Virus record (IMG/VR): IMGVR_UViG_3300020178_000002
Location: 62,001-126,000 of that record
Reading direction: 5' to 3' (one strand)
DNA: 64,000 nucleotides
The notes beneath the pieces were generated by a model. It was given only the letters and a program-made list of their open reading frames with translations. It did not search any database and had not been told where the DNA came from. Position numbers and translations under genes: made by a program. This document shows, one piece after another, positions 11,484 to 64,000 of the stretch (positions are counted from its first letter, which is position 1; each line of letters opens with the position of its first letter).

Positions 11484-13088
11484 ATGTTAGATGATGAACG
11501 AATAAAGAAAACAGTTGAGAAGCTTAGGCAGATTCGGGCTAAAGAAGATTTAAAGCCCCCACCTTGCTCAATACTCAACACACACCTGCCTAATGGAGCT
11601 GAACTAAAACTAAGACAGTATCAGATTCAAGGTATTTTACACCTTCTGGCAATGCCGAGATTTGTTCTAGGGGATGATACAGGTTTGGGAAAAACCCTAC
11701 AAACAATCGCTGCTTTGTCTTATGTCTGGGATAAGAATCCAAACATAGCTGCTGTTATATGCACCACTAAGTCAGCAGTGGGGCAATGGGAGAGTGAATT
11801 TGATAAGTTCACCAATGGTGTGACAGTATTCAAGTGTTTGGGTACAAAGAAAAAGAGAGAGAAGATTCACAAAGAGTATCAACTTTTTGAAGGTCCAAAA
11901 GCTCTGATCATGGGGTACAGAACAGCAGTAATGGACTTTCAACACCTACAACATATGGTAGGTCATGTAATGGTATTTGATGAAGCCACAAACTTTAAAA
12001 ATGACAGAGCACAAGTACATCAAGTATGTAAACACTTGGCTGGTTCAGCAGAGAAAGTTTGGTCTTTATCTGCGACAATCATTAAAAATAGACTCATGGA
12101 AGCATGGGCTATTTATCAAGTAACTGTACCTGGATTGTTTTCAAATAAGACTCACTTTATGAGAGAGTATTGCATCACTAGAGAACAAAGCATAAAAGGC
12201 TCTAGGAGAAAGATACAGATTGTTGTTGGACACAGGAAGCGTGATATAGAAGCCTTTAGAGAGGTGATAGACCCTTTCTTTATTGGTCGCCCTAAGCATG
12301 AGGTTGCTAAAGAACTTCCTTTGCTTACAACTAAGATTTTAGAATGTGAGCTGAACAAGACCCAGAAAGCCAAGTATAAAGAAGCATTAGAAGGTATTCT
12401 TGAGACTATTGATGCTGAGACAGGTGAGGTTGTAGAAAAAGAAGTATCTAAGCTCACAGCAGTCACAATCTGTCAGCAGATAGTGAATCACCCAGCATTG
12501 ATAGATTGTGATGGAGATTCTAGCAAACTTGAGAGTCTTCTAGATCTTTTAACAAACGAGTTAGAGGGCGAGAAGATTATTATCTTTAGTAGGCTTCGTA
12601 AAATGGTAGACATTATGGAAGCTGAAATTGAGGCTAAGGGTATCAAGACTTGTCGTATCACAGGAGCTGAAAATGGAGACCAGAGACTTGCTAGTCAAAA
12701 GGCTTTCCAAGACCCAGAGAATGAAACTAAGGTTTGTTTGATTACAATGGCTGCTGCTGAAGGTGTGAACTTACAGCTAGCTAAAGCTGTTGTTTTTTAT
12801 GACACTCCTTGGTCTGCTGGAGACTATCTACAGATCATAGGTCGAATGATTCGCATTGGGTCTATACATGACAAGGTTTTCAGTTACCATGTTTGTGCTA
12901 AGAAGACTATTGATGAGAGGGTTATGAAGACCCTTAAAGCTAAGATGGGCTTGATAGAAGCTGTCTTAGGTAAGCGTTTGAAAGAAGAAGGTGAGTCTGA
13001 CGAGGTATTAGAGGTTGGTCAATCAGAGTTATCAGACATTTTTGATGGCCTTCTTGAAGATGCGAATGAGATCATAAAGGTGAAGTAA
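11484..13088 (+). CDS. SNF2-family (SF2) helicase/ATPase
   Basis: GDDTGLGKT, DEAT, LSAT, EGVNLQ, PWS..Q..GRMIRIG motifs; AAGGAG RBS. Confidence 0.92.
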   Translation: MLDDERIKKTVEKLRQIRAKEDLKPPPCSILNTHLPNGAELKLRQYQIQGILHLLAMPRFVLGDDTGLGKTLQTIAALSYVWDKNPNIAAVICTTKSAVGQWESEFDKFTNGVTVFKCLGTKKKREKIHKEYQLFEGPKALIMGYRTAVMDFQHLQHMVGHVMVFDEATNFKNDRAQVHQVCKHLAGSAEKVWSLSATIIKNRLMEAWAIYQVTVPGLFSNKTHFMREYCITREQSIKGSRRKIQIVVGHRKRDIEAFREVIDPFFIGRPKHEVAKELPLLTTKILECELNKTQKAKYKEALEGILETIDAETGEVVEKEVSKLTAVTICQQIVNHPALIDCDGDSSKLESLLDLLTNELEGEKIIIFSRLRKMVDIMEAEIEAKGIKTCRITGAENGDQRLASQKAFQDPENETKVCLITMAAAEGVNLQLAKAVVFYDTPWSAGDYLQIIGRMIRIGSIHDKVFSYHVCAKKTIDERVMKTLKAKMGLIEAVLGKRLKEEGESDEVLEVGQSELSDIFDGLLEDANEIIKVK

Positions 13089-16331: not shown

Positions 16332-16397
16332 CTTTAATTCCTTTCATTCGATTTTTATATACTTATATTATCGAATGAAAGAGGGGGGGAGTGACTT

Positions 16398-31118: not shown

Positions 31119-33719
31119 ATGTTTAATGATATGCTTGCAGAGCTACTCAGACCTACAATCAACCCAAAAGGTTGGATGAAGGACTGTGAGCTACTACTAG
31201 GAACTGAAAGTAATCTTGAAGAATGTATTCAAGAATGTATGAATGCACCTGATGGTGTGTATGGCTTAGACCTTGAAACAACAGGGTTAGACAATCGTGT
31301 ATTTAATGGTGTCACCAGAGACAAGATTGTGGGTGTCTGTCTTGCCCCTCATAAAGATAAAGGCTACTACTTCCCTCTTGCCCATGCGGAGGGGTCAAAA
31401 CACAATATCTCATGGAGAGTTATGGGGGATGCCCTCAAGCGTTTGTTTGATCTTGAAGTAAAGTCAGACCCTGTGTTCCATAATGCTTCTTTTGACCAAG
31501 AGTTTCTTGAGTTCAATGGGTATGTAGACAGGCTAGGCAAAGAGAGATGGGACAATCAAAAGAGGTGGCATGATACGCTTATTATCAAGTATCTTCTCAA
31601 CCCAAGAGAAAAGGGTGGTCGTGGTTTAAAGCATCTTTCTAAAGTATTGCTTGAAAGAGAGATGATTGAGCTTGAAGACCTAATGCCAGATGCTGTGGAT
31701 AAAAACTATTCTACTTTAGACCCTAGCTGGGATCCCTGTGTTTTATATGCATCAGCAGATGCCATGAACACAGTTGGAATCTTCAACATTCTGAACAAAG
31801 AGTATGAAGAAGATACAGCTCACACTAAGTTCATCTACAACCTTGAGAAGAAAACTTTGTTATGTACTCGTTGGATGATGAGGAATAGGGTTCATGTAGA
31901 CAGGAAAACAGCACTCAAGTTTTGTCAAGAGGGTCAAGAGCTTTGGTTCAATGCATTGCTTGAAGTATATGAGGGTGCTAAAGACATACTTGGTCGAGAC
32001 ATTACTCCAAACTATGTTCGTATCTTAAAAGGTGACATTAAAGGTCTGAATCTTTTCAACCACATGGAAGTAGAGGGTGCAAGCTATAAGACTCGAGTGG
32101 ATGAAGCTCGTAAGGAAGCAAACAGACTACACCCAGACACAAAAGAAACTATCACTAAGCCTGTTAAGAGGTTAAGTAGCGATAAGTTTAAAAAGGCAGA
32201 AGGCTTTGAAGATGTAGACTTCCCTTTAACCTATGATATTCTTTCACCTCAACAGTTAGGTCTGTTGTTTAGAGAGTTAGATGTTCCAGGTCTGATGGTC
32301 ACGGAGAAGTCTGGTCAAGTAGCGACAGGGAAAGATGCTATTGATTCTGTGATTGAGGAAGCCTCTGAGGGATTCCCATTCATGGCAAAGATTAAAACCT
32401 TCCGAGAGCTTGGTAAAGCATTGGGTCAGTACCTTATTCCATTCGTAGAAGATGTAGGTCCAGATGGCACACTCAAACCTAAGTTTGATCAGTTTTCTGC
32501 TGACACAGGTCGCTTTTCTTGCAAGACAAACAGTAGACCTTGGAAAGTCAAAGATGGTGGTTGTCGTGTACCATTTCAAGGTATTCCAGCCACCTATGAC
32601 AAGAACAAGCCTAAATGCATATCTAAAATGAGACAGTGTATCTCTGTAAGGGATGACAACTATTGGTTAGCGGCCATTGACTATGCAGGTGTGGAATTAA
32701 GGTTGGTGACTAACCTATCTAAAGAGCCTAAGTGGATTGATGCTTTCTTCTCTTGTTCTGAATGTGGAAAGAAATATCAGCAAGAGCTTGGTGACGATGG
32801 CTTTGTTATTGCACCACCAAGTCTTTGTTCATGTGGTTCAGATAAGATTGGTGATCTTCACACAGGTACTGCTGTTGCTTTCTATGGAGAGGGTTCAAAG
32901 AAGCAAGACAATTGGAAAGTCCTTCGTGGTAATGGTAAGGCTTGTAATTTTGCCCTTTGTTATGGTGGTACAGGCAAGGCTGTTCAAAGGTCTATTGGCT
33001 GTGACGCTAAAGAGGGTGATGAAAAGTACAGAGTCTTTACCAAGACTTACTCTGGACTTACAGGTTGGTGGTCTCAACAACATAAGTTTGCTCGAAAGGC
33101 AGGTTATGTGAAAACTGCTATGGGCAGAGTACAGCCTTTACCAGACATCAACTCTGATCAGTTTAGGTTTAAGAGTAAAGATGAACGAAAGGCATTGAAC
33201 GGACCGATTCAAGGAACAAGTGCAGATGTTACCAAGTTAGCTATGGCTCTCATTTATGAGAATGTCCAAAAGCGAGGTTGGGAAGATAAGCTGTTAATGG
33301 TTTTAACAGTCCATGACGAAATTGTATTTGAGATCCACAAAGACATTCTTAAAGAGGCTATTGAAATGATTTCAGACCTTATGACTAAGAACAATGTGGT
33401 TCAAAAAATGAATTGGCCTATTCCATTACTTGTAGACGTTGAGTTAGGTAAGGATTGGACTGTTCCTTATGACTTGAAGGACATTATGCAAGCAGATGGA
33501 GACCCAGAGCTTGTTAAAATATTTGAGGGAGAGAAGCCTGAAGAGGTTGTCGAGACAGTAGAAGCTGTGGAAGTACCTACTATTTTAACATTTGAGGTAT
33601 TGAGCCTTGATGAAGAAACAGCAGATAAAATTGCTGAGTGGATTAAAGAAAGAAAACTACTCAATGATGAGTGGGATGTGTCCTACGAGGGCAGATCAGT
33701 AAAAGTATTATTTGAATAA
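31119..33719 (+). CDS. polA: DNA polymerase family A with 3'-5' exonuclease
   Basis: LDLETTG, FHNASFD, YASADA (exo); TGRFS, DYAGVELR, GKACNFALCYG, NGPIQGTSAD, TVHDE. Confidence 0.95.
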   Translation: MFNDMLAELLRPTINPKGWMKDCELLLGTESNLEECIQECMNAPDGVYGLDLETTGLDNRVFNGVTRDKIVGVCLAPHKDKGYYFPLAHAEGSKHNISWRVMGDALKRLFDLEVKSDPVFHNASFDQEFLEFNGYVDRLGKERWDNQKRWHDTLIIKYLLNPREKGGRGLKHLSKVLLEREMIELEDLMPDAVDKNYSTLDPSWDPCVLYASADAMNTVGIFNILNKEYEEDTAHTKFIYNLEKKTLLCTRWMMRNRVHVDRKTALKFCQEGQELWFNALLEVYEGAKDILGRDITPNYVRILKGDIKGLNLFNHMEVEGASYKTRVDEARKEANRLHPDTKETITKPVKRLSSDKFKKAEGFEDVDFPLTYDILSPQQLGLLFRELDVPGLMVTEKSGQVATGKDAIDSVIEEASEGFPFMAKIKTFRELGKALGQYLIPFVEDVGPDGTLKPKFDQFSADTGRFSCKTNSRPWKVKDGGCRVPFQGIPATYDKNKPKCISKMRQCISVRDDNYWLAAIDYAGVELRLVTNLSKEPKWIDAFFSCSECGKKYQQELGDDGFVIAPPSLCSCGSDKIGDLHTGTAVAFYGEGSKKQDNWKVLRGNGKACNFALCYGGTGKAVQRSIGCDAKEGDEKYRVFTKTYSGLTGWWSQQHKFARKAGYVKTAMGRVQPLPDINSDQFRFKSKDERKALNGPIQGTSADVTKLAMALIYENVQKRGWEDKLLMVLTVHDEIVFEIHKDILKEAIEMISDLMTKNNVVQKMNWPIPLLVDVELGKDWTVPYDLKDIMQADGDPELVKIFEGEKPEEVVETVEAVEVPTILTFEVLSLDEETADKIAEWIKERKLLNDEWDVSYEGRSVKVLFE

Positions 33720-36231: not shown

Positions 36232-36828
36232 ATGTCAGAAATTGAGCCTCGTTTAGTTGTTTTAGAAGGAAGTGACCGAGTTTATGAGACTTTCGTTAAG
36301 CCATACCTTTCTAAGTTTAAGTCAGTTTCTTTAACAAATGAAGATGTTAAAAAACTAAAAGACAAGGTAGAAGCGATCAAGAAAGTAAAAGAAAAAGAAT
36401 ACTGGTTTGATTCAGGGTCTATGGAAAAGAGATGGATGACAGGTTGGGGTGGAGAACTTGCTGTTGAAAAGTATCTGGGCTTGAAAGTTGCAGACTTCAC
36501 TATTGGCAAAGCATACAACTATGCTTACTCTGACTTAAAAGAAGCAGGGTATGATGTAGGTGTTAAAACCTGTAATGAGGGAGACTTCCCTTTATTAAAA
36601 AAGCCTAGTGTATCTAGTCAAATCAATACTGAGATCTTTGTGATGAAAAGAGATGATCTTAATTATTTGATTTGTGGTCTTGGTTCTCGAGAAGTTTTGA
36701 ACAACCCAAAAAACTATTCTTCGCTTCTTGTAAGAAGCCCTTCTGTTAGACATAAAGCCTGCTTCTATAGGTTTGATCTATTGAAGCATGACTTTAGCCT
36801 TGAAGATCTTAGAGAGTATTGTTCTTAA
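36232..36828 (+). CDS. Putative PD-(D/E)xK-like nuclease
   Basis: GELAV...SD......DVGVKT resembles the E..D..xVK pattern, but is degenerate. Confidence 0.45.
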   Translation: MSEIEPRLVVLEGSDRVYETFVKPYLSKFKSVSLTNEDVKKLKDKVEAIKKVKEKEYWFDSGSMEKRWMTGWGGELAVEKYLGLKVADFTIGKAYNYAYSDLKEAGYDVGVKTCNEGDFPLLKKPSVSSQINTEIFVMKRDDLNYLICGLGSREVLNNPKNYSSLLVRSPSVRHKACFYRFDLLKHDFSLEDLREYCS

Positions 36829-38893
36829 ATCTTCTACTTAGTCCAGAGAACCCGTGATTCTTTTTTTGATTGTAAACACAAGTAGCTAAAGCACCAGAAT
36901 CACCCACAAGGTATACTTCATCTTTCGCTCTTGTTATAGCAGTATATAGTAAAGACCTTTGCAATAAGTTAGAGCTACAGCTACTGACTAAAGGCATGAT
37001 AATAAGGTCATACTCCAGACCTTGGCTTTTATGTACAGTGGTAGCATAAGCAAGTCTTAAGATTTTCGATACTTGGTCTCTAGGGATAGAAACTATTTGA
37101 TCTTGCACACCTTTAATCAGAACATCAACAGAGCTTTTGTTAATGCCACAAATACGACCAACATCTCCATTAAAGACCTCTAAGTCATATTCATTCTTGG
37201 TGATCATTACTCGGTCACCCTCTCTCAAGGTGTCTTTTCCAATTTTTAAACGAGAGCCTCCAATGTCAGGATTGAGAACAGACCTCAACTCTTTGTTTAA
37301 GTTGGTCACACCTAACAGGCCATGATGTGTAGGGCTTATAACATGAAAGTCCACATCATCTATATGGAAGTCTCTACAAAGAGAGATGATAGCTTCTAGT
37401 GCTTTTTGTTCTGACTCTTTCTCTAAAAAGTGAAACTCAGTATTACTTTGGGGAGTGATTCCATTATGAACATCATGTGCTGCTTGTGTGACTCCAGAGC
37501 CTTCACCTTGTCTAAAGACTTCCACAAGGTGTGTTCTTGGTACACTTTGACTTTCAATAATATCGGAAAGAACAAAGCCAGCACCTACAGGTGGTAGCTG
37601 TGCAATGTCTCCAACCATAATAACTCTACACTTAGGTGCTATCCCTCTCATCATTCTCCACATGAGGTGAAGATCTACCATAGAGGACTCATCAATAATC
37701 AGAACAGTTTCTGTTCTAGGGTTATTAATGTGATGTTTCCAGATTTCAGCTCTAGGGTTTACTTTTGTTAGGATAGGTTTTAGGTTTTCTGATTCTTCTT
37801 CTTTTTTAATTCCCTCATAGTCTGACTTCTTTTCATCAGATTCAGAGGGCTGACCTGCACCAAAAGCTCTATGTATAGTTACAGCTTTAACACCTGAGAG
37901 TATGGTAGCTCTTTTTGCAGCGATTCCTGTGGGTGCGACAAGTAAGATTTGTTCTTGGTAATCAATTAGGATTTTGCAGATAGTAGACAAGATAGTTGTT
38001 TTACCTGTACCAGGCAAACCTGTGACTATAGAGAAAGGTTCAGTGATTCCTTGTCTTATTGCATTAACTTGAGTGTCTGTAAGATTGTATCTAGTATAGC
38101 TCTTTATTTCTTCATCAGAGATTTCGATTCCAGATTGCTTTCTAACAGGAGAAGTGACTAAGCTTGCTACTTCTTCTTCCATTTGATGATAAGCGGGCAA
38201 ATAAAGGCATTTCTTGCTCTCATTCCTATCAATAATCATCTTTGGAGGGTCACACTCGACCATTTCTTTTATGCACTTTGCAATTTCAGTAGGTTCAGTG
38301 ATTCCTGTAAGTAGAGAAGCATCTCTAAAAACAGTATTACTATCTAAGAAACAGTTGCCTTGTTGTACTCCTTGAGCCATAGACCAGAAGATGCAGGCTT
38401 GAACTCTATATGGGTTAGTGATGTTATACTTATCTTCCATAAGAGTTTTAGCAATAGCATCAGCACCTTGAAAAGAAACACCTTTGTAAACAAGATACCA
38501 AGGATTTTCTTTAATCATATCAGGATTGCTTTTGATTTCTCTCCACAAGCTATTGATGATACTAACAGGTATGCCAGAATCTACAAGAGAGCTAATAAGT
38601 TCTAATGAGGATTCCATTTCTGGGTTAGACCACTCAGCCCATTGGGTGAGAGCAGTTCCTTTTAGAAACTTTGGGTTAATAGGGTTTCGAGAGATCTCAA
38701 GAACAGGCTTATTGTTTTTATCTAGCTTTCGTTTGCCTGAAAAAGTAAAGACAGAGCCACTAGAAACAGGTCCTACAACATTTCCTTTAACAACAATAGG
38801 TTCTGTTCCTATTTCTGAAGCTACAATACACCTAAGAATATAATAAGGTGGGTTTGCAAATATTTGGCTTAAAACTTTACTGGCATAATACAT
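36809..38893 (-). CDS. recD2: RecD2-like SF1B helicase
   Basis: TGLPGTGKTT, DESSM, GDIAQLPPVG, VFRQ, AYATTVHKSQG, LYTAITRAK; N-terminal NPW.L/HhH region; AAGGAG RBS at ATG 38893. Confidence 0.92.
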   Translation of the reverse strand: MYYASKVLSQIFANPPYYILRCIVASEIGTEPIVVKGNVVGPVSSGSVFTFSGKRKLDKNNKPVLEISRNPINPKFLKGTALTQWAEWSNPEMESSLELISSLVDSGIPVSIINSLWREIKSNPDMIKENPWYLVYKGVSFQGADAIAKTLMEDKYNITNPYRVQACIFWSMAQGVQQGNCFLDSNTVFRDASLLTGITEPTEIAKCIKEMVECDPPKMIIDRNESKKCLYLPAYHQMEEEVASLVTSPVRKQSGIEISDEEIKSYTRYNLTDTQVNAIRQGITEPFSIVTGLPGTGKTTILSTICKILIDYQEQILLVAPTGIAAKRATILSGVKAVTIHRAFGAGQPSESDEKKSDYEGIKKEEESENLKPILTKVNPRAEIWKHHINNPRTETVLIIDESSMVDLHLMWRMMRGIAPKCRVIMVGDIAQLPPVGAGFVLSDIIESQSVPRTHLVEVFRQGEGSGVTQAAHDVHNGITPQSNTEFHFLEKESEQKALEAIISLCRDFHIDDVDFHVISPTHHGLLGVTNLNKELRSVLNPDIGGSRLKIGKDTLREGDRVMITKNEYDLEVFNGDVGRICGINKSSVDVLIKGVQDQIVSIPRDQVSKILRLAYATTVHKSQGLEYDLIIMPLVSSCSSNLLQRSLLYTAITRAKDEVYLVGDSGALATCVYNQKKNHGFSGLSRRFKNNTL

Positions 38894-39377
38894 CTTGGTT
38901 CTCCTTCCACCAACTTCTAAAGCCATTTATAAAGGGATTAAATAATTCATCAAGACAACCTACATCAAGACAATCTATAAGGTACTCAAATGGATATATG
39001 TCCTCAAAGACCCTCCATGCAAAACTATAACAGGATTCTTGAGGTACGACTGTTAAGACTTCAACCTTTATCTTTTTATTTTCTTTTAGACAGAACCTAT
39101 CTAGTTGCCATCTTTTGTAGCTTGCAATCTTTTCTTCCCATCTTTTATCTAAATAAAGGTTTCGAATCCAAGTCTCATCAATATCATTTATGCTATTGAG
39201 AGGGGGCGATAAAGAGGGCGATTTTTCTTCTCGGATGAAATTTAATTCTTCCATAGTAGAAGCAATGGCTTTTTCTATAGGTAATATCCCATTAGTATGG
39301 TTTACAAACCCATCTTCCATTAAGATTGGGATGGCCTCTTTAAGACCCCCAGAGTTTTTAGTGAATAGCATATACAA
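38877..39377 (-). CDS. Hypothetical protein
   Basis: ORF upstream of recD2 with AAGGA RBS. Confidence 0.6.
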   Translation of the reverse strand: MYMLFTKNSGGLKEAIPILMEDGFVNHTNGILPIEKAIASTMEELNFIREEKSPSLSPPLNSINDIDETWIRNLYLDKRWEEKIASYKRWQLDRFCLKENKKIKVEVLTVVPQESCYSFAWRVFEDIYPFEYLIDCLDVGCLDELFNPFINGFRSWWKENQDVLCQ

Positions 39378-46982: not shown

Positions 46983-48812
46983 TTAATATAAAGGTGTCTT
47001 TGCGACAGAGATTTCACGACTAGATGCTTTAACTTCTTCTTCTACAATGTCGATGATATCATCAACAACCAACTCTGAAGAGAGATCTCTTACTGCGTTG
47101 ACTACATTTTGTGGGATGCTAAAGAGTTTTTCTAACAGACCTGTACAAGTCACTATGTTTGATGTTGTCAACTCTTCTTCAAAGGTATGTGGCATAACAG
47201 ATAAGATCAAGCTCATACGAACACCCTCTGCCATAGGGATTGCAACAAGAGAGTAAGGGTAGCTCTTGTCACTATCTTTAAAGTAAGACTTTACCCTATC
47301 TTTGTAGATCCTATTAACAACAGAGAGTTGAATATCTCCCCTTTGCATTTCTTTTTCTCTGATGTTCAAATATATGTCAATATACTTCATCATTGTAGAT
47401 TTGAAGTTAGCAGGTGTAACTCCCATAGTAGTTATAGGCAAGCAGAGTTTGCAAGACTCCCACAAGGCTGCAATGTAATCCTCTGGCTCTGTGCTGTTCT
47501 CTGCAATATTTGCCATTGAAGTACCCCATTTTTTAGAGCTACTGTGCAGATCACCCTCAATCTTGATTCCCTGATAGGTGAATCCACCATTAACAGCCAA
47601 GAACAAGTTGACCCACTGAGGAATAGATTTGGTTCTCTTCCTCATTCTTTTTGCAAAGTCAGACTTTCCTTTTTTAACCTTTGTTTTAATCTTAGGGTTA
47701 AAGATTTTAGCATCTGCATCCATACAATTATCAACAAAAGAAGCAAAGAGCCTAAGTTGTCCAATGCTCATAAACTTGTATTTCTTAATGATCATTGGTG
47801 CAAGCTTCCTCGAAGACACCTCACTACAAGTCATTACTATATCTTGAACTATATCTTCATCCCATCTCTTAGCGATAAGCATAGCCCAATCTTCATCAAG
47901 CATTCTCCATACACTCGCAGACAAGAATAAGAGATCTTTCTTCTTTTGTAGCATATTTGCAGACATATTATATGTTGCGTTCTCTTTAAATGCCTTACCC
48001 TCTAAAGCTCTGGTGATAAGATTATCTACTTCTTTTTGAGCAACTAAAGGGTCTGTGCCATCAAAGAGTTCCATTTGGTCATAGACAGTTGTATTTGATG
48101 AGGTGTCCTCTATATTTTCAATTGGGTCACCATAAGCATTTTCGTCTGTGTTTAAGTCTACAATATATCTTTTCCTCTTTAAGTCACCTGGCATGATCTC
48201 TCGTTTGGTGAAGTGAGGACTTTTTGGGTCATATACTCTTCTAATATAATTGCCAACATACTTAATTGCAGATGCAATGTCTGTAAACTTACTAGGGTCT
48301 TTGTTGAGTCTGTACCAGACACCACCATTAAGCTCCATTTGAGTCTTACCAGCACTAGAGCGAGAAGCTTCAGGTTCGCTCTTATTTCTGCCATGAGGTA
48401 TTAAGAAATATCTAGAGAAAAGGTCTGTACCTAAGTCCATAAAAGAACCTCTAAATGTAGATGCTAATTTACTAAGCATAGTAGCCCATTCAGCACCACC
48501 AGAACCATTCCACTCATCCATAATCATCTTATCAAGAGAGCTGTCTCTTCTTCTTAATTGTCTTCTTAGCCCTCGAAAGTCCGAAGGTAAAGTAGAGTCT
48601 GTAGGTTCTAATTCTGTTTGACCAAGAGCGAATAAAGTGGACCATGCAGTGTAATAAAAGTACCTTTGAGAAGTCTCTTTATTAAAAGGGTCGCTAAGGT
48701 CTTTCAAAAAAGCTTCTTTAAGCCACATCTCTGAGGCTGCTTTGATGAGATTCTCTGAAGCTTGCTTATCTCTCTGGCTTATAATGTCAACTAACTTTAA
48801 ATATGGACTCAT
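46983..48812 (-). CDS. Large hypothetical protein with KQAS/KAAS/KEA-containing N-terminus
   Basis: 609 aa ORF, GGGAGG RBS, late motif upstream. Confidence 0.7.
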   Translation of the reverse strand: MSPYLKLVDIISQRDKQASENLIKAASEMWLKEAFLKDLSDPFNKETSQRYFYYTAWSTLFALGQTELEPTDSTLPSDFRGLRRQLRRRDSSLDKMIMDEWNGSGGAEWATMLSKLASTFRGSFMDLGTDLFSRYFLIPHGRNKSEPEASRSSAGKTQMELNGGVWYRLNKDPSKFTDIASAIKYVGNYIRRVYDPKSPHFTKREIMPGDLKRKRYIVDLNTDENAYGDPIENIEDTSSNTTVYDQMELFDGTDPLVAQKEVDNLITRALEGKAFKENATYNMSANMLQKKKDLLFLSASVWRMLDEDWAMLIAKRWDEDIVQDIVMTCSEVSSRKLAPMIIKKYKFMSIGQLRLFASFVDNCMDADAKIFNPKIKTKVKKGKSDFAKRMRKRTKSIPQWVNLFLAVNGGFTYQGIKIEGDLHSSSKKWGTSMANIAENSTEPEDYIAALWESCKLCLPITTMGVTPANFKSTMMKYIDIYLNIREKEMQRGDIQLSVVNRIYKDRVKSYFKDSDKSYPYSLVAIPMAEGVRMSLILSVMPHTFEEELTTSNIVTCTGLLEKLFSIPQNVVNAVRDLSSELVVDDIIDIVEEEVKASSREISVAKTPLY

Positions 48813-48841
48813 GTGTAATCCCTCCCTTGTCTACTCTTTCT

Positions 48842-48854
48842 TATAAAAGATTTA
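48842..48854 (-). promoter_or_regulatory. Putative late promoter motif
   Basis: TAAATCTTTTATA, 29 nt upstream of 48812. Confidence 0.55.
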
Positions 48855-48873
48855 CAAAAGATAACTGTACCCC

Positions 48874-48907
48874 TTGCTTTTTATTGATAAGTGTATATAA
48901 TCAATAA
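48874..48907 (+). promoter_or_regulatory. Sigma70-type promoter overlapped by an inverted repeat
   Basis: TTGCTT-16nt-TATAAT; arms TTATTGAT (48881-88) and ATCAATAA (48900-07). Confidence 0.5.
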
Positions 48908-48968
48908 CACATCACGACAAAGTTCCGTTAGAACAAAGTCAAAGTTAAAGTAAAAACAAGGAGTGTAA

Positions 48969-49853
48969 ATGTTTAATATCTCGGTAGAGAGTACCCAACC
49001 TATTCTCAAAGAGTTGACTATTCTTAACATCCAGCCCTCATTCAATTTCCTCTATGAACTTGATTCTTTAAACAGAGAAGTCTCTAAATACAAGCTCTTT
49101 AAAAAGAGATCACGAAAGAGATTATCTGGCAATCCAACCAAAGCAAAAGAGCTTAATAGTTGGAATGAAACCCAGAAGTGGATTTTCGATGCTGAGTCAA
49201 ATCGGTTTGAGAAGATAAAGAACTTCTGTATCAAGACAGCCTCTAAGGATATCAAGACAGGTGACATCATCTATGACAACTATGAAGATTTCTTCATGGG
49301 ATGGGTCACAGACCTCTGTAAAAGAAACACCTTAGCTACAAAGATCAATAGCGGTGAGAAGATCAACAACTCAGTGCTTTATTGGTGGTACAGACAGTTT
49401 ATTCAGAGAGCTTCTATGAAGTCTGCACAAGATGCTCATTCAAGAGTTTATGGTGTTCGGACTCAAAGTGAAATCACCCATGAAAAGGTTCATGAACATG
49501 ATCTTGCTTACTTAGATGCTTCTGGCCTACAAGAAGCTAAAGTAGTCCACAAGTTTAATGAGGAAACAGGTTCTACAACAGGAGAGCCTGACTATTATGT
49601 TGATGAAGACCCTTATCAAAAGCTACACCTGCAAAGTGTGCATGCTTTTGTTAAAAAAGTTTTTTTGAGGTCTTATGGGAGTGTTGAAAAGACAGAGAAT
49701 AGATACCAGCTTTTCCTTGAAATCCTTGAAGGTAAAGGTGGTTATTCAAATCTTGAAGAATGGGCTGAGTCTCATGGTATTTCTATTAACAAGCTAAAGA
49801 AGCGTATCTCTCACATTGAAAGTCTTTTAAGTAAGCACAAAGACGAGATCTAA
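48969..49853 (+). CDS. Putative phage sigma-70-like factor
   Basis: VLYWWYRQFIQRA resembles sigma region 2.3-2.4 (TYAxWWIRQAIxRA); C-terminal HTH YSNLEEWAESHGISINKLKKRISHI resembles region 4.2. Confidence 0.6.
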   Translation: MFNISVESTQPILKELTILNIQPSFNFLYELDSLNREVSKYKLFKKRSRKRLSGNPTKAKELNSWNETQKWIFDAESNRFEKIKNFCIKTASKDIKTGDIIYDNYEDFFMGWVTDLCKRNTLATKINSGEKINNSVLYWWYRQFIQRASMKSAQDAHSRVYGVRTQSEITHEKVHEHDLAYLDASGLQEAKVVHKFNEETGSTTGEPDYYVDEDPYQKLHLQSVHAFVKKVFLRSYGSVEKTENRYQLFLEILEGKGGYSNLEEWAESHGISINKLKKRISHIESLLSKHKDEI

Positions 49854-49888
49854 TTCTTTACCAATGCCCTCTAAAACAATTTGCTTTT

Positions 49889-49930
49889 AAGCCCTGCTTC
49901 CCAGAAATGGAAGGCAGGGCTTTTTTTTTT
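49889..49930 (+). terminator. Intrinsic terminator
   Basis: AAGCCCTGCTTCC-loop-GGAAGGCAGGGC followed by T10. Confidence 0.9.
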
Positions 49931-51554
49931 ACAAGAATTTTTTGAGGTTCTTAATCTCTGACTTTAAATTTTGTAGAGCACTTGAAGCAATATGCATCTT
50001 TTCAGAGGCAGCTTTACCTGCCTTTTGTTTCTGGTTTACAGACTTAACATACTTCTGAACCTGTGCCTTGATTTCAGCAACAGCTTTTTCCATTTCAGCC
50101 CTGTAGCCATCTGCATCAAAGTTCCCATCTTCATCAATAAACTGAGAAACAGCTAGTAGCTCATCTTTACCTATGTTCCCATAAAATTGAGCAAGGGCAT
50201 CTTCAAAGTTGACTTTAGCAGCAACTCTCATTGCATTGTCTACTGCATTACCTACTAAGAATGCACTACCACCAACAACTTTGCCTATACCTGAAATGCC
50301 TGCGTTGAAAGTGCCCCAAAGCAGACCCTCTGACACTTCTTTAGCTCCAATGGCAAGCTCTTTTGTAGCTTCAGCTATAGCTGACATAGCACTTTGCCTA
50401 CCTTTTGTGATTTCTTCACTAATCTTAGTCTGGCTTTCTTTATTGACACTATTTCCAAAAACTGCGGAGATTGCTTTCTTAACAGAGTTTGAGATTTTCT
50501 TGGTGTCAACTTGAGCAGCTTGACTAAAACCCTCAGAGAACGAATCTCGAGGGTCTCTAGTGCCATCTAGCATAGCTTTACCAATAGCTTTCGGTGCTTT
50601 ACCAAAGGCTGCTTGGATAGGAGTAGCGAGAGCTGGCCCCCATGTAGGTAAATGTTCAGAGCTTTTAACAACTTGATCAGTCCACCTTGTTTTGTTGTGT
50701 TTTTTCATAAACGCAACAGCTTTACTATTCAGAGGATGGTCTTTCTTTGATGCATAAGACCTAACAGTAGAAAGAGCTAAGTCTTTACCTTCAAATTGAA
50801 CTCTTTCAACTTTTTTTGGCTTAGATTCAGGCTTGCTTTTCGGTTTCTTTTTGTCTTTGCCAAAAATTGCAACTCTTTCATTATGTGCTTTTTTAATTCC
50901 GAAGAAGCCACCTATGTCTCTTTTAAAACGATTCCATTTATTACCAGCTATATTTGCAAGGCTGTCATTCTCTTCAACGACTTTACATAGCCTATCAAAT
51001 TCTGGCTCAAGCTCTCTAAATATGGGAAGCTCTAGTCTTCCTAAATTGTTTTTTTCTCGATATATGCCTTGTTTTATCTTATCAAGAGCATCAAAAGAAG
51101 AAGCTGTCTCTGCTTCTTCAGTCCAGCCTTTGATTAAATCCCTTACTCTCTTTAGCTTTTTAGTACGCTCTTTGACAATATCATCTATGGTAGTCTTAAT
51201 CTTATACAAGTCCTTTGCTTTATTTTGAACTCGACTATAATAGTGGTGGTGTAAAGAATTGTTTATAGCCTTAAGATCTATCTTCTTCATGGTATAAAAT
51301 ATGTTCTTCATATCTTTAGTTGATAGGTCTTCTGGACTATAAGTGCTAGAAAACATACCTTTACCATAAGACAAAACTTTGTAGTTAAGTTCTGACCATA
51401 TCTTCTCAACTTTATGACCATCCTCTATTAGCTTCTTGAGACTAGGCCACTTCTTATCAAAGTCAGCCCTATGTCTCTCTAAAGCTTCACCACTAGGCTG
51501 GTAAGGTAGTCTTTTCAAGTATTCATCAAATTCTATCTCTTTGTTAATATTCAT
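49929..51554 (-). CDS. Multi-module helical protein, candidate virion-internal protein
   Basis: Coiled coil, KKA/RVA junctions, Ala/Gly-rich hydrophobic segment, KAAS..HIAS tail. Confidence 0.65.
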   Translation of the reverse strand: MNINKEIEFDEYLKRLPYQPSGEALERHRADFDKKWPSLKKLIEDGHKVEKIWSELNYKVLSYGKGMFSSTYSPEDLSTKDMKNIFYTMKKIDLKAINNSLHHHYYSRVQNKAKDLYKIKTTIDDIVKERTKKLKRVRDLIKGWTEEAETASSFDALDKIKQGIYREKNNLGRLELPIFRELEPEFDRLCKVVEENDSLANIAGNKWNRFKRDIGGFFGIKKAHNERVAIFGKDKKKPKSKPESKPKKVERVQFEGKDLALSTVRSYASKKDHPLNSKAVAFMKKHNKTRWTDQVVKSSEHLPTWGPALATPIQAAFGKAPKAIGKAMLDGTRDPRDSFSEGFSQAAQVDTKKISNSVKKAISAVFGNSVNKESQTKISEEITKGRQSAMSAIAEATKELAIGAKEVSEGLLWGTFNAGISGIGKVVGGSAFLVGNAVDNAMRVAAKVNFEDALAQFYGNIGKDELLAVSQFIDEDGNFDADGYRAEMEKAVAEIKAQVQKYVKSVNQKQKAGKAASEKMHIASSALQNLKSEIKNLKKFL

Positions 51555-51557
51555 ATC

Positions 51558-52064
51558 TTAGCCTCTAATTCTACGCTCATGTAGAAATATAACATCTCCA
51601 CTGCTGGGGTTTTTTCTAGCTAGAGACTTCCAGACTCTAATAGCTTTATCTGAAGTAGTTCTAGTATGACAATAGTTAGGAATAAAGAAGATAGGGATTC
51701 CAACATCCTCTCTTACTTTATTTGCAATGGTTTTATACATCAATATGCCACATTTTTTATTTCGATGCTCTTCATCTAGGTTAGATTCTGTTATCTCAAA
51801 AACAGGAATACCATTTTCCCATGTGCTTGCAGGGAAAGAATCGCTCCACAGTTCCCATAAGATTTCCATGTCCTCTTTGCATACAAAGTTATCGAAATCA
51901 GATACCTCTATATAGTGGAGAGCACCCTCGATAGAGCCTACTATTTCATCATTATGGATCAAATCAAAACCATGTGTTGCGTCATATCTTGTCCAATCTG
52001 TTTCTTCAATAGTGTACCTGTTTTTCTTAGCGTACCTGAGAGCTACTTTCTTTGCTAATCTCAT
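51558..52064 (-). CDS. GNAT-like acetyltransferase (paralogue of 53767-54270)
   Basis: LDEEHRNKKCGILMY acetyl-CoA-loop-like; TSDKAIRVWKSL. Confidence 0.6.
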   Translation of the reverse strand: MRLAKKVALRYAKKNRYTIEETDWTRYDATHGFDLIHNDEIVGSIEGALHYIEVSDFDNFVCKEDMEILWELWSDSFPASTWENGIPVFEITESNLDEEHRNKKCGILMYKTIANKVREDVGIPIFFIPNYCHTRTTSDKAIRVWKSLARKNPSSGDVIFLHERRIRG

Positions 52065-61987: not shown

Positions 61988-62192
61988 CTCTATTCCTCAC
62001 TTTCCTTTTTTTCTTTTGAAGTAAAAGTAAGTCTTTCTTCTTCTCAAGATACTCTAAGTTCTCAATGTTCTTTTCAAGCTCCTCTGAAAAATGATCTTTG
62101 AGTTTAATTAGGTTTTCAAGCAAATCGCCTACTTGAGTACCCTCAAAGTTGACCTTAGTGCCCTCTGTCTGATTCCATTTATTCTCACTCAT
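61980..62192 (-). CDS. Small coiled-coil protein
   Basis: 8-nt overlaps with both neighbours; GGAGG RBS. Confidence 0.6.
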   Translation of the reverse strand: MSENKWNQTEGTKVNFEGTQVGDLLENLIKLKDHFSEELEKNIENLEYLEKKKDLLLLQKKKRKVRNRDA

Positions 62193-64000
62193 CTATGTCC
62201 TCCAAAGCTTTTATGTCTGGGCTTGCCAGATCTATTCGAGAGAGCTTTTGTAAAGTACCCTCTACAGTATTAGTCCTTACCTTAATCCACCTGTTTCTCT
62301 TCTCTCTAGCTTCCATAATAGAAAGACCAGAATTAAACAGTGAAGGCATACCTGTCACTAAAGTATGACCCTCATTAAGCATTTGAGGGTCTTCTACTAG
62401 CAATCTTCTGTCTGGAACAGACAACATATCATCACTGAATGGGAATGAACCATCTCCAAGTATTGTCGAAATCAACAAATCATTTGAAGGGTGGGTGTTA
62501 TCATTAACCCCTACCTTATCAATCAAATCTTCTGCTTCATATAAAGCCCAAGTTTGTCTTTCTAAAGGTATAGAGTTAAATTGCCTAATCTTATCAGCCC
62601 AAGATAAGGTTCTCTCTCTAAAGAAGAAAACAAGAGCTGCTAAAGAATCATTAAGATAGGTCTTCCTCTTGTATATCTTGTAAGAGAATGGATGAATTGA
62701 ATTAGGGTTAGCTGTGTAAGTTCCATTTTCAATACCAGATGTCACCCTTAGTTCATTTGAACTCACACCATTAACCAATGGTAAGAAATAATCTTCTGGA
62801 TTATCATCTCCTGCATAAAACTCAACAGATATAGAGTTAGCTGTAAATGAAGTGATCTTATAAACACCTCTATTGTCATCCAAAGGACTAGGGCTACCAA
62901 ACACCCCCTGTGAGTCATCACCTAAAGGTGGCTGACCATACTCATCTAAAGTGTTCGGAAGCAAACCTTGAGGATCTATGATCAAGTAATATAACTCTTG
63001 ATCATCTGCATTTAAGAGAAGATTGAAATCTACATTGGTGTCTGTTAGCTCATTTACTTGGTCTACACTTATCCCATCTACAGGCTCTGATGAATACACC
63101 TCTTCAAAGCCATGTGAGATGAACTTCTCAAAAGACTGTATTTCAGGTACTAAACTATCCCTAACCTCTACTTTAAAGTAAGAATGCAGGTCTGAAAGAG
63201 AACCCGAAACGACCTTACCTAATAAGTAGGTGTCGTCTACCTCTGAAACTCTAAACTTAAGAGTTTCATTGTCCTCTTCATCAAAACACCTTACTATATC
63301 TCCGATAGATACTGTGTCTGTAAAGAGACCTATGTTAGTACCCTGACCACTATAATCAAAGTAGTCCTCAACAGAAGCTAACCTTATTAAATCTCCCACT
63401 CTGTCTATCTGGCTAACAATCCCATATCTTTCATCATAAAGGAATCTAAAGCCTGTTAAAGTAGTATGAAGCCTTGTAAATAATTCACTAAATCTTCTAA
63501 GCCTACGAACTACAAAACCTACTTCTTCATAACCTACCCAACCTGTAGTGCCACTCACTGTGTAATCAGAAAAAGTCTTAACTTGTGAAGTAGGGTCACC
63601 CAATAAAACAGGCTCTGTACCTCTGTAATCTCTCCATAATTCTGGGAAAGAATTGTCTAAGTAAATACCCCTATAACTATTCACTGTGAATGTTATAATG
63701 TCCTCTGGTGTTATAAAGGCTTCACCATAGTCATTCCCTGCACCATCTAAGATGGAAGCAAAAGAAGCAGACCATGAACCCCCAAAAAGAACCCTCAAAG
63801 TATAAAGACCTGAAACTATAAAACCATCATATATGCTTGAAAGAGAACTTGAAGTACCTGTTAAACCACCAGCTACTTGTAAAGAGTAGTCAAAAGAACC
63901 CTCTACATCAACAATATGCAAAGAGCTGACTAAAGAAGTCTTAAGGGTATCAAATGAAAACTTATGAATACCAGCAATGGTCTGACCAGCACTGTCTAAA
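62185..64000 (-). CDS. C-terminal part of a large acidic, probably structural (baseplate/tail) protein; 5' end outside the window
   Basis: Frame stays open from 63921 to the window end (LDSAGQTIAGIHKFSFD...). Confidence 0.6.
   Translation of the reverse strand, partial: LDSAGQTIAGIHKFSFDTLKTSLVSSLHIVDVEGSFDYSLQVAGGLTGTSSSLSSIYDGFIVSGLYTLRVLFGGSWSASFASILDGAGNDYGEAFITPEDIITFTVNSYRGIYLDNSFPELWRDYRGTEPVLLGDPTSQVKTFSDYTVSGTTGWVGYEEVGFVVRRLRRFSELFTRLHTTLTGFRFLYDERYGIVSQIDRVGDLIRLASVEDYFDYSGQGTNIGLFTDTVSIGDIVRCFDEEDNETLKFRVSEVDDTYLLGKVVSGSLSDLHSYFKVEVRDSLVPEIQSFEKFISHGFEEVYSSEPVDGISVDQVNELTDTNVDFNLLLNADDQELYYLIIDPQGLLPNTLDEYGQPPLGDDSQGVFGSPSPLDDNRGVYKITSFTANSISVEFYAGDDNPEDYFLPLVNGVSSNELRVTSGIENGTYTANPNSIHPFSYKIYKRKTYLNDSLAALVFFFRERTLSWADKIRQFNSIPLERQTWALYEAEDLIDKVGVNDNTHPSNDLLISTILGDGSFPFSDDMLSVPDRRLLVEDPQMLNEGHTLVTGMPSLFNSGLSIMEAREKRNRWIKVRTNTVEGTLQKLSRIDLASPDIKALEDIDE

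What the first reader, a model, noticed from the sequence alone, without database searches (positions are those of the whole stretch)
48874..49930. Stand-alone early unit encoding a divergent sigma factor, candidate reader of the phage promoter motif
Seen: a host-type TTGCTT-16-TATAAT promoter inside an inverted repeat, a 294-aa ORF with YWWYRQFIQRA and a C-terminal HTH, then a strong terminator. Known: the WW-RQ segment of sigma region 2.3/2.4 melts and reads the -10 element. Inference: a phage sigma that is expressed early, is possibly repressed at the inverted repeat, and redirects host RNAP to middle or late promoters.
Basis: partly seen in the sequence, partly recalled or inferred. Interest (0 to 1): 0.6.

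Follow-up and report, generated by a model that had tools for sequence, protein, structure and literature searches.

The report
Sequence-orphan sigma factor of a jumbo phage
A one-gene unit in a 312-kb uncultured marine jumbo phage most likely encodes a sigma factor too diverged for sequence databases to recognise, which probably switches the host's RNA polymerase onto the phage's own promoters.

Summary
TTGCTT-16-TATAAT, the 8-bp inverted repeat, the 294-aa ORF with YWWYRQFIQRA and a strong terminator are all at the stated coordinates.

The sigma reading is supported by fold, not by sequence. Pfam, NCBIfam and PHROGs find nothing. An AlphaFold model built on 38 metagenomic homologues (pLDDT 80) matches almost only sigma factors. 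The match is colinear from region 2 to region 4.2. Separate sigma-2 and sigma-4 domain matches reach Z 5-7. Weak profile alignments place YWWYRQFIQR on sigma70 [10 protein letters not shown] and the C-terminal helix-turn-helix on region 4.2.

No RNA polymerase gene was recognised in the phage, so host core enzyme is the likely partner. An in-silico docking to the beta' clamp helices gave only weak support.

Two points need correcting. The inverted repeat is neither significant nor conserved. The promoter is composite: a host-type -35/-10 pair overlaps a phage promoter class, CCCCC-N10-11-TTGATAAK, found at about 20 sites. Both layers are conserved in six related phages.

Which phage promoter class the factor reads is unresolved. 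Overall this is a new variant of a known kind.

The parts
48870..48873 (+). C-run, the upstream element of the phage class B promoter motif (CCCCC-N10-11-TTGATAAK)
   Evidence: About 20 intergenic class B sites genome-wide. CCC is invariant in six homologous loci.
48874..48879 (+). -35-like hexamer TTGCTT of the host-type promoter
   Evidence: Sequence. It matches TTGACA at 3 of 6 positions. T.G is conserved in 5 of 6 homologues. It is the only one of 20 class B sites with TTG right after the C-run.
48884..48891 (+). TTGATAAG, the -10-like core of the class B phage promoter; it overlaps the left arm of the inverted repeat
   Evidence: GATA is invariant in the homologues.
48896..48901 (+). -10 hexamer TATAAT, 16 nt after TTGCTT and exactly 10 bp downstream of GATAAG
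   Evidence: Sequence. TA...T is invariant in six homologues. It is absent at this offset from the other 19 class B sites.
48881..48907 (.). 8-bp inverted repeat TTATTGAT / ATCAATAA, probably fortuitous
   Evidence: Found. Such a repeat occurs in 7% of shuffles. The right arm is not conserved in L015 or L017.
48840..48858 (-). Class A-like promoter (TTTGTAAATCTTTTATAAG on the - strand) for the divergent 609-aa gene
   Evidence: The equivalent sites in L001 and L018 score 18.7 and 19.9 bits.
48958..48963 (+). Shine-Dalgarno sequence AAGGAG, 5 nt before the ATG
   Evidence: Sequence. AAGGAG occurs 39 times in upstream regions against 5.5 expected.
48969..49853 (+). 294-aa ORF, the candidate sigma factor
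   Evidence: It has 9 close and 35 distant homologues. The model has pLDDT 80.1.
49149..49424 (+). Sigma-2-like domain (residues about 61-152), including YWWYRQFIQRA at 49380-49412
   Evidence: VIA-align matches: SigR sigma-2 (1h3l) Z 6.1; sigmaE region 2 (2mao) Z 5.7, rmsd 3.2 over 85 residues; SigC -10 domain (2o7g) Z 5.2. hhalign matches to sigma70 residues 425-447 and to regions 2.1-2.4.
49425..49613 (+). Linker (residues 153-215) with the conserved QDA..R..G.RTQSE segment and a beta-hairpin; there is no three-helix sigma-3 domain
   Evidence: Secondary structure of the model. R159 is invariant; D155 and Q166 are at least 90% conserved.
49614..49850 (+). Sigma-4-like domain (residues 216-294); helix-turn-helix at about 262-289 (49752-49835)
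   Evidence: VIA-align matches: 3mzy Z 6.8; CnrH Z 6.4, rmsd 2.2 over 66 residues; SigD4 and SigL region 4 Z 6.3-6.4; sigmaE region 4 bound to -35 DNA Z 5.3. hhalign to RpoS 236-314. Atlas cluster carrying Sigma70_r4.
49889..49932 (+). Intrinsic terminator: interrupted stem of 14 pairs (11 + 3), then U10
   Evidence: -23.1 kcal/mol, z = -4.5. Analogous hairpin plus U-tract follows the gene in L002 and L015; the U-tract is weaker in L037.

Best explanation
The 294-aa protein is a phage-encoded two-domain sigma factor (sigma-2 plus sigma-4, no sigma-3). It belongs to a sequence-orphan family confined to uncultured jumbo phages.

Proposed mechanism:
1. Unmodified host holoenzyme transcribes the gene as a monocistronic unit from the conserved host-type promoter (TTGCTT-16-TATAAT). 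Transcription ends at the hairpin-U10 terminator.
2. The protein binds host core RNA polymerase: its sigma-2 domain to the beta' clamp helices, and presumably its sigma-4 domain to the beta flap.
3. The new holoenzyme is redirected to phage-specific promoters.
4. The gene's own promoter is a composite of the host-type pair and the class B motif CCCCC-N10-11-TTGATAAK. My preferred version is therefore that the factor reads class B: it activates itself and about 20 class B units. A further step, or the same factor with a co-factor, then opens the commoner class A promoters (TAATAG-N4-TTTATA).

Shown: the gene, its conservation, the predicted fold, the motif classes and their distribution. Inferred: RNA polymerase binding, timing of expression and promoter specificity.
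For: Fold:
- Foldseek against the PDB, with two independent models, returns only sigma factors in the top 50.
- VIA-align against 48,161 chains ranks sigB, ECF sigma L, sigma H and sigma32 first. It gives separate sigma-2 and sigma-4 domain matches.
- The second look aligns residues 54/64-294 colinearly with E. coli sigma70 residues 356/371-607 at Z about 7.
- BFVD hits are mostly annotated phage sigma factors.
- Language-model features score 0.95 to Sigma-70 and viral sigma clusters.

Sequence:
- hhalign places 132-153 on sigma70 425-447, 103-151 on regions 2.1-2.4 and 208-288 on region 4.
- The near-invariant D107 and Q143 fall on sigma70 D403 and Q437 in those alignments.

Partner:
- Six-frame searches of the complete 312-kb genome find no Rpb2_6, Rpb1_2 or T7-type RNA polymerase.
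- The four largest ORFs carry no RNA polymerase domain.
- No D-x-DGD catalytic motif occurs in a plausible context.
- The complex test of the sigma-2 domain with E. coli beta' 215-350 scored 0.36 against a best control of 0.00.

Unit:
- The gene is a lone + gene between - genes in all eight contexts.
- The promoter footprint is conserved. A canonical TTGACT-18-TATGAT precedes a distant homologue.
- Only 1 of 20 class B sites, this one, has the added host-type elements.
Against: - No sequence method reaches significance. Pfam, NCBIfam and PHROGs give nothing. The hhalign E-values are 0.025-0.22, with probabilities under 2%.
- All structural Z-scores are below 8. The tool warns that this range is common for helical models. 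Foldseek E-values are about 0.01 and TM-scores about 0.2.
- The WW pair is not invariant in distant family members.
- The complex result is rated weak support and used E. coli beta', which may not be the host's.
- The C-run lies only 12-13 bp from GATAAK, closer than a canonical -35/-10 pair.
- The RNA-library contigs include the promoter itself, so they give no start site.
- A very divergent phage RNA polymerase cannot be excluded.
Confidence: 0.72

Rival explanations
1. The protein is a sigma factor as above, but it reads the abundant class A motif (TTAATAGTcTnTTTATA; the reader's TA-N5-TTTAT). Class B would then be the early class, read without new phage protein.
For: - Class A is the dominant phage motif: 63 of 103 hits at 11 bits or more are intergenic, and they sit 25-40 nt before start codons.
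- It precedes giant tail-fibre-like genes and the units containing the SNF2 helicase and DNA polymerase A.
- Class B units include runs of small ORFs typical of early genes.
- Class A is strongly conserved in related phages of different GC content: L001 at 20.7 bits, L018 at 22.2 bits.
Against: - Class A is a compact block of 16-17 bp with no separate upstream element for a sigma-4 domain.
- It leaves the unique host-type overlay on the sigma gene's class B site unexplained.
- Class A is only weakly present in the distant homologue contigs L037 and L038.
- Pentapeptide-repeat genes occur under both classes, so function does not separate them.
Confidence: 0.3
2. The protein is not a sigma factor. 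It is an ordinary DNA-binding regulator, a helical N-domain with a LuxR/GerE-type helix-turn-helix, acting as activator or repressor at one of the phage motifs.
For: - The C-terminal domain also matches DosR, EsrB, DesR and KorA at Z 4.8-5.6.
- The profile search of PDB sequences finds only the FIS helix-turn-helix, weakly.
- All Z-scores are middling, and no Sigma70 Pfam model matches.
Against: - The N-terminal domain independently matches sigma-2 domains.
- Full-length colinear matches are to sigma factors only.
- The YWWYRQFIQR segment sits exactly where region 2.3/2.4 lies.
- The nearest language-model clusters are sigma factors.
- Docking to the beta' clamp helices scored above all controls.
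Confidence: 0.15
3. The protein is a sigma-like specificity subunit of an unrecognised phage-encoded RNA polymerase, as gp68 is in phiKZ and gp226 in AR9.
For: - The genome is a 312-kb jumbo phage with many giant ORFs of unknown function.
- It has compact phage-specific promoters.
- Canonical sigma70 promoters are not enriched.
Against: - No Pfam RNA polymerase domain appears in six frames.
- There is no DFDGD-type motif.
- No gp68-like or gp226-like chains appear among the fold matches.
- As far as I know, sigma70-type two-domain factors are known only with bacterial core enzyme.
Confidence: 0.07

Closest known systems
ECF (group 4) sigma factors, e.g. E. coli sigmaE, M. tuberculosis SigL and SigH, S. 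coelicolor SigR
   Same: - Two-domain sigma-2 plus sigma-4 architecture without sigma-3.
- Best whole-chain and domain fold matches.
- Possible positive autoregulation from a cognate promoter upstream of its own gene.
   Different: - No Sigma70_ECF, r2 or r4 sequence signature.
- A group-1-like aromatic WW-RQ motif in region 2.3/2.4, which ECF factors lack.
- An N-terminal extension of about 60 residues and a linker of about 60 residues with a beta-hairpin.
- No neighbouring anti-sigma gene recognised.
Bacillus phage SPO1 gp28 (and gp33/gp34)
   Same: A phage sigma made from a host-type promoter replaces the host sigma on host core and switches transcription to phage promoters. This comparison rests on established knowledge and on PMC13401047.
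   Different: No detectable sequence relationship. The host and the promoters differ. Here the sigma gene is a conserved monocistronic unit with a composite promoter.
T4 gp55 late sigma, with gp33 and the sliding clamp
   Same: A highly diverged phage sigma reads a compact AT-rich -10-type element. T4 reads TATAAATA; the class A core TATTTATA is its reverse complement.
   Different: gp55 is a minimal sigma-2-only protein that needs gp33 and the clamp. This protein has a full sigma-4 domain. The phage uses a family A DNA polymerase and is not T4-like. Group 2 jumbo phages carry recognisable sigma factors (PMC7824862).
phiKZ gp68 and AR9 gp226, specificity subunits of phage multisubunit RNA polymerases
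   Same: Sequence-orphan promoter-specificity factors in jumbo phages.
   Different: They serve phage-encoded beta/beta'-like enzymes. None is detectable here, and they do not appear among the fold matches.

Membership tests
sigma70 family | Sigma-2 domain fold (regions 1.2-2.4) | tested here: met
   Model residues 61-164 match SigR sigma-2 (Z 6.1), RpoE (Z 5.8, rmsd 3.2 over 85 residues), sigmaE region 2 (Z 5.7) and the SigC -10 domain (Z 5.2). The Z-scores are moderate; see the caveats.
sigma70 family | Sigma-4 domain with helix-turn-helix (regions 4.1-4.2) | tested here: met
   Residues 216-294 match 3mzy (Z 6.8), CnrH (Z 6.4, rmsd 2.2 over 66 residues), SigD4, SigL region 4 and sigmaE region 4 bound to DNA. 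An Atlas cluster carrying Sigma70_r4 matches at rmsd 3.1.
sigma70 family | Colinear order of sigma-2 then sigma-4 along one chain | tested here: met
   Residues 54/64-294 align to E. coli sigma70 356/371-607. The Foldseek top 50 are all sigma chains, over 240-290 alignment columns.
sigma70 family | Sequence signature: Pfam Sigma70_r2, r4 or r4_2, or NCBIfam sigma models, at the curated cut-off | tested here: not met
   No hit for the protein, for any of its 38 relatives, or in six frames at this locus.
sigma70 family | Region 2.3/2.4 melting and -10 recognition motif | tested here: inconclusive
   YWWYRQFIQR aligns with [10 protein letters not shown] at hhalign E 0.086. Q143 is at least 90% conserved. 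The aromatic pair varies among distant members as YW, HF, EW or MF.
sigma70 family | Binding to the beta' clamp helices of core RNA polymerase | tested here: inconclusive
   Complex test: ipSAE 0.36 (three runs 0.25-0.38) against a best control of 0.00, rated weak support. The mark was reached by 51 of 78 solved complexes and 2 of 108 mismatched pairs. At 0.60 or under it was reached by only 5 of the 78 solved complexes, and all 4 passing mismatches scored in that range. Runs agree in at least 49% of contacts; partner pLDDT is at least 58.
sigma70 family | Confers promoter-specific initiation on core enzyme | not testable with these tools
   Needs in vitro transcription or infection transcriptomics.
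ECF (group 4) sigma | ECF sequence models (Sigma70_ECF, TIGR02937) and a co-transcribed anti-sigma gene | tested here: not met
   No model matches. The gene is monocistronic in all eight contexts.
phiKZ/AR9-type specificity subunit | Co-occurrence with phage beta/beta'-like RNA polymerase genes | tested here: not met
   No Rpb2_6 or Rpb1_2 match in the complete genome. There is no DFDGD motif.

The most novel reading that the evidence does not exclude
A 312-kb jumbo phage without its own RNA polymerase may run its whole programme from a single immediate-early gene. In this reading, a sequence-orphan sigma factor is the only conserved target of unmodified host holoenzyme. It then locks itself on through an overlapping cognate promoter offset by one helical turn (class B) and opens the rest of the genome. 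The factor's family would define a previously unrecognised clade of marine and salt-marsh jumbo phages and a new branch of the sigma70 superfamily, with its own promoter geometry (C-run 12-13 bp from a GATAAK -10).
Probability: 0.25. Interest if true: 0.65.

Novelty: new variant of a known kind. Interest (0 to 1): 0.48.

Why it matters
- Phage-encoded sigma factors are a classic mechanism. This family is invisible to Pfam, NCBIfam and PHROGs and was found only on metagenomic contigs, three of them 270-312 kb long.
[quoted passage not shown] Families like this one could fill part of that gap.
- The locus comes with two well-defined, conserved promoter classes and a composite promoter. Together they form a compact system that can be tested directly for how a giant phage takes over host transcription.
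- The factor and its promoters could also serve as an orthogonal pair for synthetic biology.

Tried and rejected
Searches that found nothing:
- Pfam, PHROGs and NCBIfam on the protein.
- Pfam and PHROGs on all 38 family members: no sigma family.
- tblastn and megablast against 50,697 phage records: no match.
- Profile searches of PDB sequences: only chance or weak helix-turn-helix hits.
- A second word search with the profile: no Pfam-annotated bridge to sigma families.
- IMG/VR scan: only an identical 47-kb fragment.
- Atlas structure search: uninformative except for one Sigma70_r4 row.
- Rfam: only sub-threshold attenuator-like hits on the terminator.

Results that were spurious or non-discriminating:
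- The genome-contig scan returned one hit. It is a chance SVLYWWYR peptide in a 770-aa DUF262-like ORF of a Capnocytophaga MAG.
- The 5' leader is unstructured, z = -0.8.
- Metatranscriptome contigs (run X20) cover patches of the region, including the promoter itself. They cannot show a start site, a strand, or even transcription.
- Separating classes A and B by gene function failed, because pentapeptide-repeat genes occur under both.
- Deep conservation of class A did not discriminate either: it is weak in L037 and L038.
- The first expectation-maximisation motif run drifted onto the Shine-Dalgarno sequence.

Readings rejected:
- The inverted repeat as an operator.

Full report
**Context.** The window is bases 62001-126000 of a complete IMG/VR virus record. 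The record is 312,136 bp long, has 127-bp direct terminal repeats and is 38% GC. It is a jumbo phage with many short transcription units on alternating strands. It has a family A DNA polymerase, SNF2 and RecD-like helicases, a methionyl-tRNA synthetase, an ATP-dependent DNA ligase and several pentapeptide-repeat proteins. It has no relative among 50,697 deposited phage genomes. Near-identical DNA occurs in salt-marsh, marine-plankton and seawater metagenomes. The host is unknown. AAGGAG is strongly used as a ribosome-binding site.

**Observation.** Three qualifications apply.
- The -35 hexamer matches the consensus at only 3 of 6 positions, so the consensus scan did not list the site.
- sigma70-type promoters as a class are not enriched upstream of genes in this genome: 14 found against 15.6 expected.
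- The 8-bp inverted repeat arises in 7% of shuffles of this intergenic region, and it is not conserved in the 70%-identical homologues.

**The protein.** Pfam, NCBIfam and PHROGs give nothing. A word search found 9 homologues of 46-96% identity. An exhaustive HMMER profile search found 35 cluster representatives. All come from metagenomes, none carries a Pfam domain, and some lie on contigs of 270-275 kb.

With 10 sequences, AlphaFold gave pLDDT 60. With 38 sequences it gave pLDDT 80.1. The model has:
- a disordered N-terminus of about 60 residues;
- a helical domain at residues 64-152;
- a linker with a beta-hairpin at residues 191-210;
- a four-helix C-terminal domain at residues 215-289.

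Structure searches gave a consistent answer.
- Foldseek against the PDB returned only sigma factors in the top 50 for both models. Best E-values were 3.6e-3 and 7.6e-3, with probabilities 0.8-0.95.
- VIA-align against 48,161 representative chains, which does not depend on Foldseek, ranked sigB, ECF sigma L, sigma H, sigma32 and sigma-domain crystal structures first. It gave separate matches for the N-domain to sigma-2 and for the C-domain to sigma-4.
- Realignment of the Foldseek list placed residues 54/64-294 colinearly on E. coli sigma70 residues 356/371-607 at Z about 7.
- In the viral structure library the best hits are mostly annotated phage sigma factors.
- The nearest language-model clusters are Sigma-70 and viral sigma families, at score 0.95.

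Individually these scores are middling: all Z-scores are below 8 and TM-scores are about 0.2. The low TM-scores are expected, because free and holoenzyme-bound sigma differ in how the domains are arranged. The weight of the evidence lies in the near-exclusive identity of the hits and in both domains matching in the right order.

Sequence-level support is only suggestive. hhalign puts INNSVL-YWWYRQFIQRASMKSA on sigma70 [23 protein letters not shown] at E 0.086. It puts residues 103-151 on regions 2.1-2.4 at E 0.22 and residues 208-288 on RpoS region 4 at E 0.025. In those alignments the near-invariant D107 and Q143 fall on sigma70 D403 and Q437. From my own knowledge, not tested here, D403 belongs to the core-binding region 2.2 and Q437 contacts the -12 base pair.

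**Which polymerase.** Six-frame searches of the complete genome found no Rpb2_6, Rpb1_2 or T7-type RNA polymerase domain. The control for the T7-type family did not ring in any control genome, so that negative is weak. The four largest ORFs carry no polymerase domain. No DFDGD-type motif occurs. Host core enzyme is therefore the default partner.

A complex test of the sigma-2 domain with E. coli beta' residues 215-350 scored 0.36 against a best control of 0.00, rated weak support. The mark was reached by 51 of 78 solved complexes and 2 of 108 mismatched pairs. Passes at 0.60 or below are more often wrong than right unless the pairing was already likely. The runs agree in at least 49% of contacts, and the partner's pLDDT is at least 58.

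**The unit.** In all eight genomic contexts recovered, including distant family members, the gene is a single + gene with a divergent - gene upstream and a convergent - gene downstream. Hairpin-plus-U terminators follow it in L002 and L015, and a weaker one in L037. The 609-aa upstream neighbour is 60% identical in L002 but has no recognisable family.

**Promoters.** Motif analysis of 161 upstream regions shows two phage-wide classes.
- Class A has the consensus tcTTAATAGTcTnTTTATA. Of 103 hits at 11 bits or more, 63 lie in the roughly 6% of the genome that is intergenic, mostly 25-40 nt before a start codon. It precedes tail-fibre-like giant genes and replication units alike.
- Class B has the consensus CCCCC-N10-11-TTGATAA(G/T). 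It has about 20 intergenic sites. They precede pentapeptide-repeat proteins, the tRNA synthetase, the ligase, an SNF2 helicase, runs of small ORFs, and the sigma gene itself.

Both classes recur in related phages of 38-47% GC.

At the sigma gene, the class B elements are CCCC at 48870-48873 and GATAAG at 48886-48891. They are interleaved with TTGCTT and TATAAT, and the two -10-like hexamers lie exactly 10 bp apart. Alignment of six homologous upstream regions shows that both layers are invariant: CCCT.G..TTT..T.GATA......TA...T. Among the 20 class B sites, only this one has TTG directly after the C-run and TAnnnT 4 nt after GATAAK. A distant homologue in a 48%-GC phage carries a canonical TTGACT-18-TATGAT and no class B element.

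**Mechanism.** The conserved host-type promoter argues that unmodified host holoenzyme makes this protein first. The added class B layer, unique in being paired with a host-type promoter, is most simply explained if class B needs the factor itself. That would be a bootstrap followed by positive autoregulation, as in many ECF sigma factors. A bipartite class B site also suits a two-domain sigma better than the single-block class A.

Arguments on the other side are as follows.
- The distance from the C-run to GATAAK (12-13 bp) is shorter than a canonical spacer.
- Class B units look like early genes.
- Class A is the dominant motif.

My estimates are about 0.4 that the factor reads class B, 0.3 that it reads class A, and the rest for both, neither, or not a sigma at all.

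The genome also encodes a 144-aa protein with two Sigma70_r4_2-type helix-turn-helix motifs (49 bits) and a weaker 189-aa one. These are candidates for the second specificity or for a co-factor.

**Comparison and novelty.** Functionally this resembles SPO1 gp28 and, in architecture, ECF sigma factors. It fails the sequence definition of every curated sigma family, so I file it as working like a sigma and folding like one. It is a new, sequence-orphan variant, not a member of any named subgroup.

**Limits.** No experiment or usable transcript data were available. RNA-library contigs cover patches of the region, including the promoter itself, and may derive from DNA. The host is unknown. A very divergent phage polymerase cannot be excluded.

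Noticed in passing
whole genome; window sites at about 10707(-), 10711(+), 16601(+), 18521(+), 21297(-), 22481(+), 29513(+), 42979(-), 52459(-), 57069(-), 57656(-): Class A promoter-like motif tcTTAATAGTcTnTTTATA. Of 103 hits at 11 bits or more, 63 are intergenic, mostly 25-40 nt before start codons. It is conserved in related phages of higher GC content.
   Followed up: partly
whole genome; window sites ending at 16367(-) and 48891(+): Class B promoter-like motif CCCCC-N10-11-TTGATAA(G/T), then AAGRGTA. About 20 intergenic sites precede pentapeptide-repeat, MetRS, ligase and SNF2 genes and clusters of small ORFs.
   Followed up: partly
outside the window: genome 297685-298119(-) and 209720-210289(-): Two further small proteins with sigma region 4-type helix-turn-helix motifs. 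One is 144 aa with two motifs (Sigma70_r4_2, 49 bits, above the cut-off). The other is 189 aa with a sub-threshold Sigma70_r4 hit. Both are possible extra transcription factors or co-factors.
   Followed up: partly
window 46983-48812(-) and 49929-51554(-): The two neighbours of the sigma gene (609 aa and 541 aa) have no Pfam or PHROG family. The 609-aa protein is 60% identical in L002, which is more conserved than the sigma itself. Only the C-terminal half of the 541-aa protein is shared, at 42% identity.
   Followed up: partly
outside the window: genome 20241-21185(+), 295747-296358(-), 57200-58807(-), 305492-306769(-); also L015, L016, L018: The phage and its relatives encode at least four pentapeptide-repeat proteins. 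Relatives also carry a small Hc1 (histone H1-like) protein.
   Followed up: no
outside the window: genome 28900-30426(+) and 158578-159516(-): A phage-encoded methionyl-tRNA synthetase (Pfam E 7e-109) and an ATP-dependent DNA ligase. Both sit behind class B sites.
   Followed up: no
window 11484-13088(+), 31119-33719(+), 36809-38926(-): Replication module: SNF2-family helicase, family A DNA polymerase with 3'-5' exonuclease, and RecD2-like helicase.
   Followed up: no
window 62185-64000 and beyond (genome 124185-133208, -); genome 271249-285305(-): Giant ORFs of 3007, 2344 and 2321 aa. The 2344-aa ORF starts with an Mtd_N tropism-determinant domain and looks tail-fibre-like. The others have no family.
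   Followed up: partly
window 47000-52000: A salt-marsh metatranscriptome run holds 100%-identical short contigs over patches of this region, including 48876-49034, which spans the promoter. Marine strains 95-99% identical show no difference between 48641 and 49159. They also have one T fewer in the terminator U-run.
   Followed up: partly
L040 1279-3591: The peptide SVLYWWYR occurs by chance in a 770-aa DUF262-like ORF of a Capnocytophaga MAG. It is not a homologue.
   Followed up: yes
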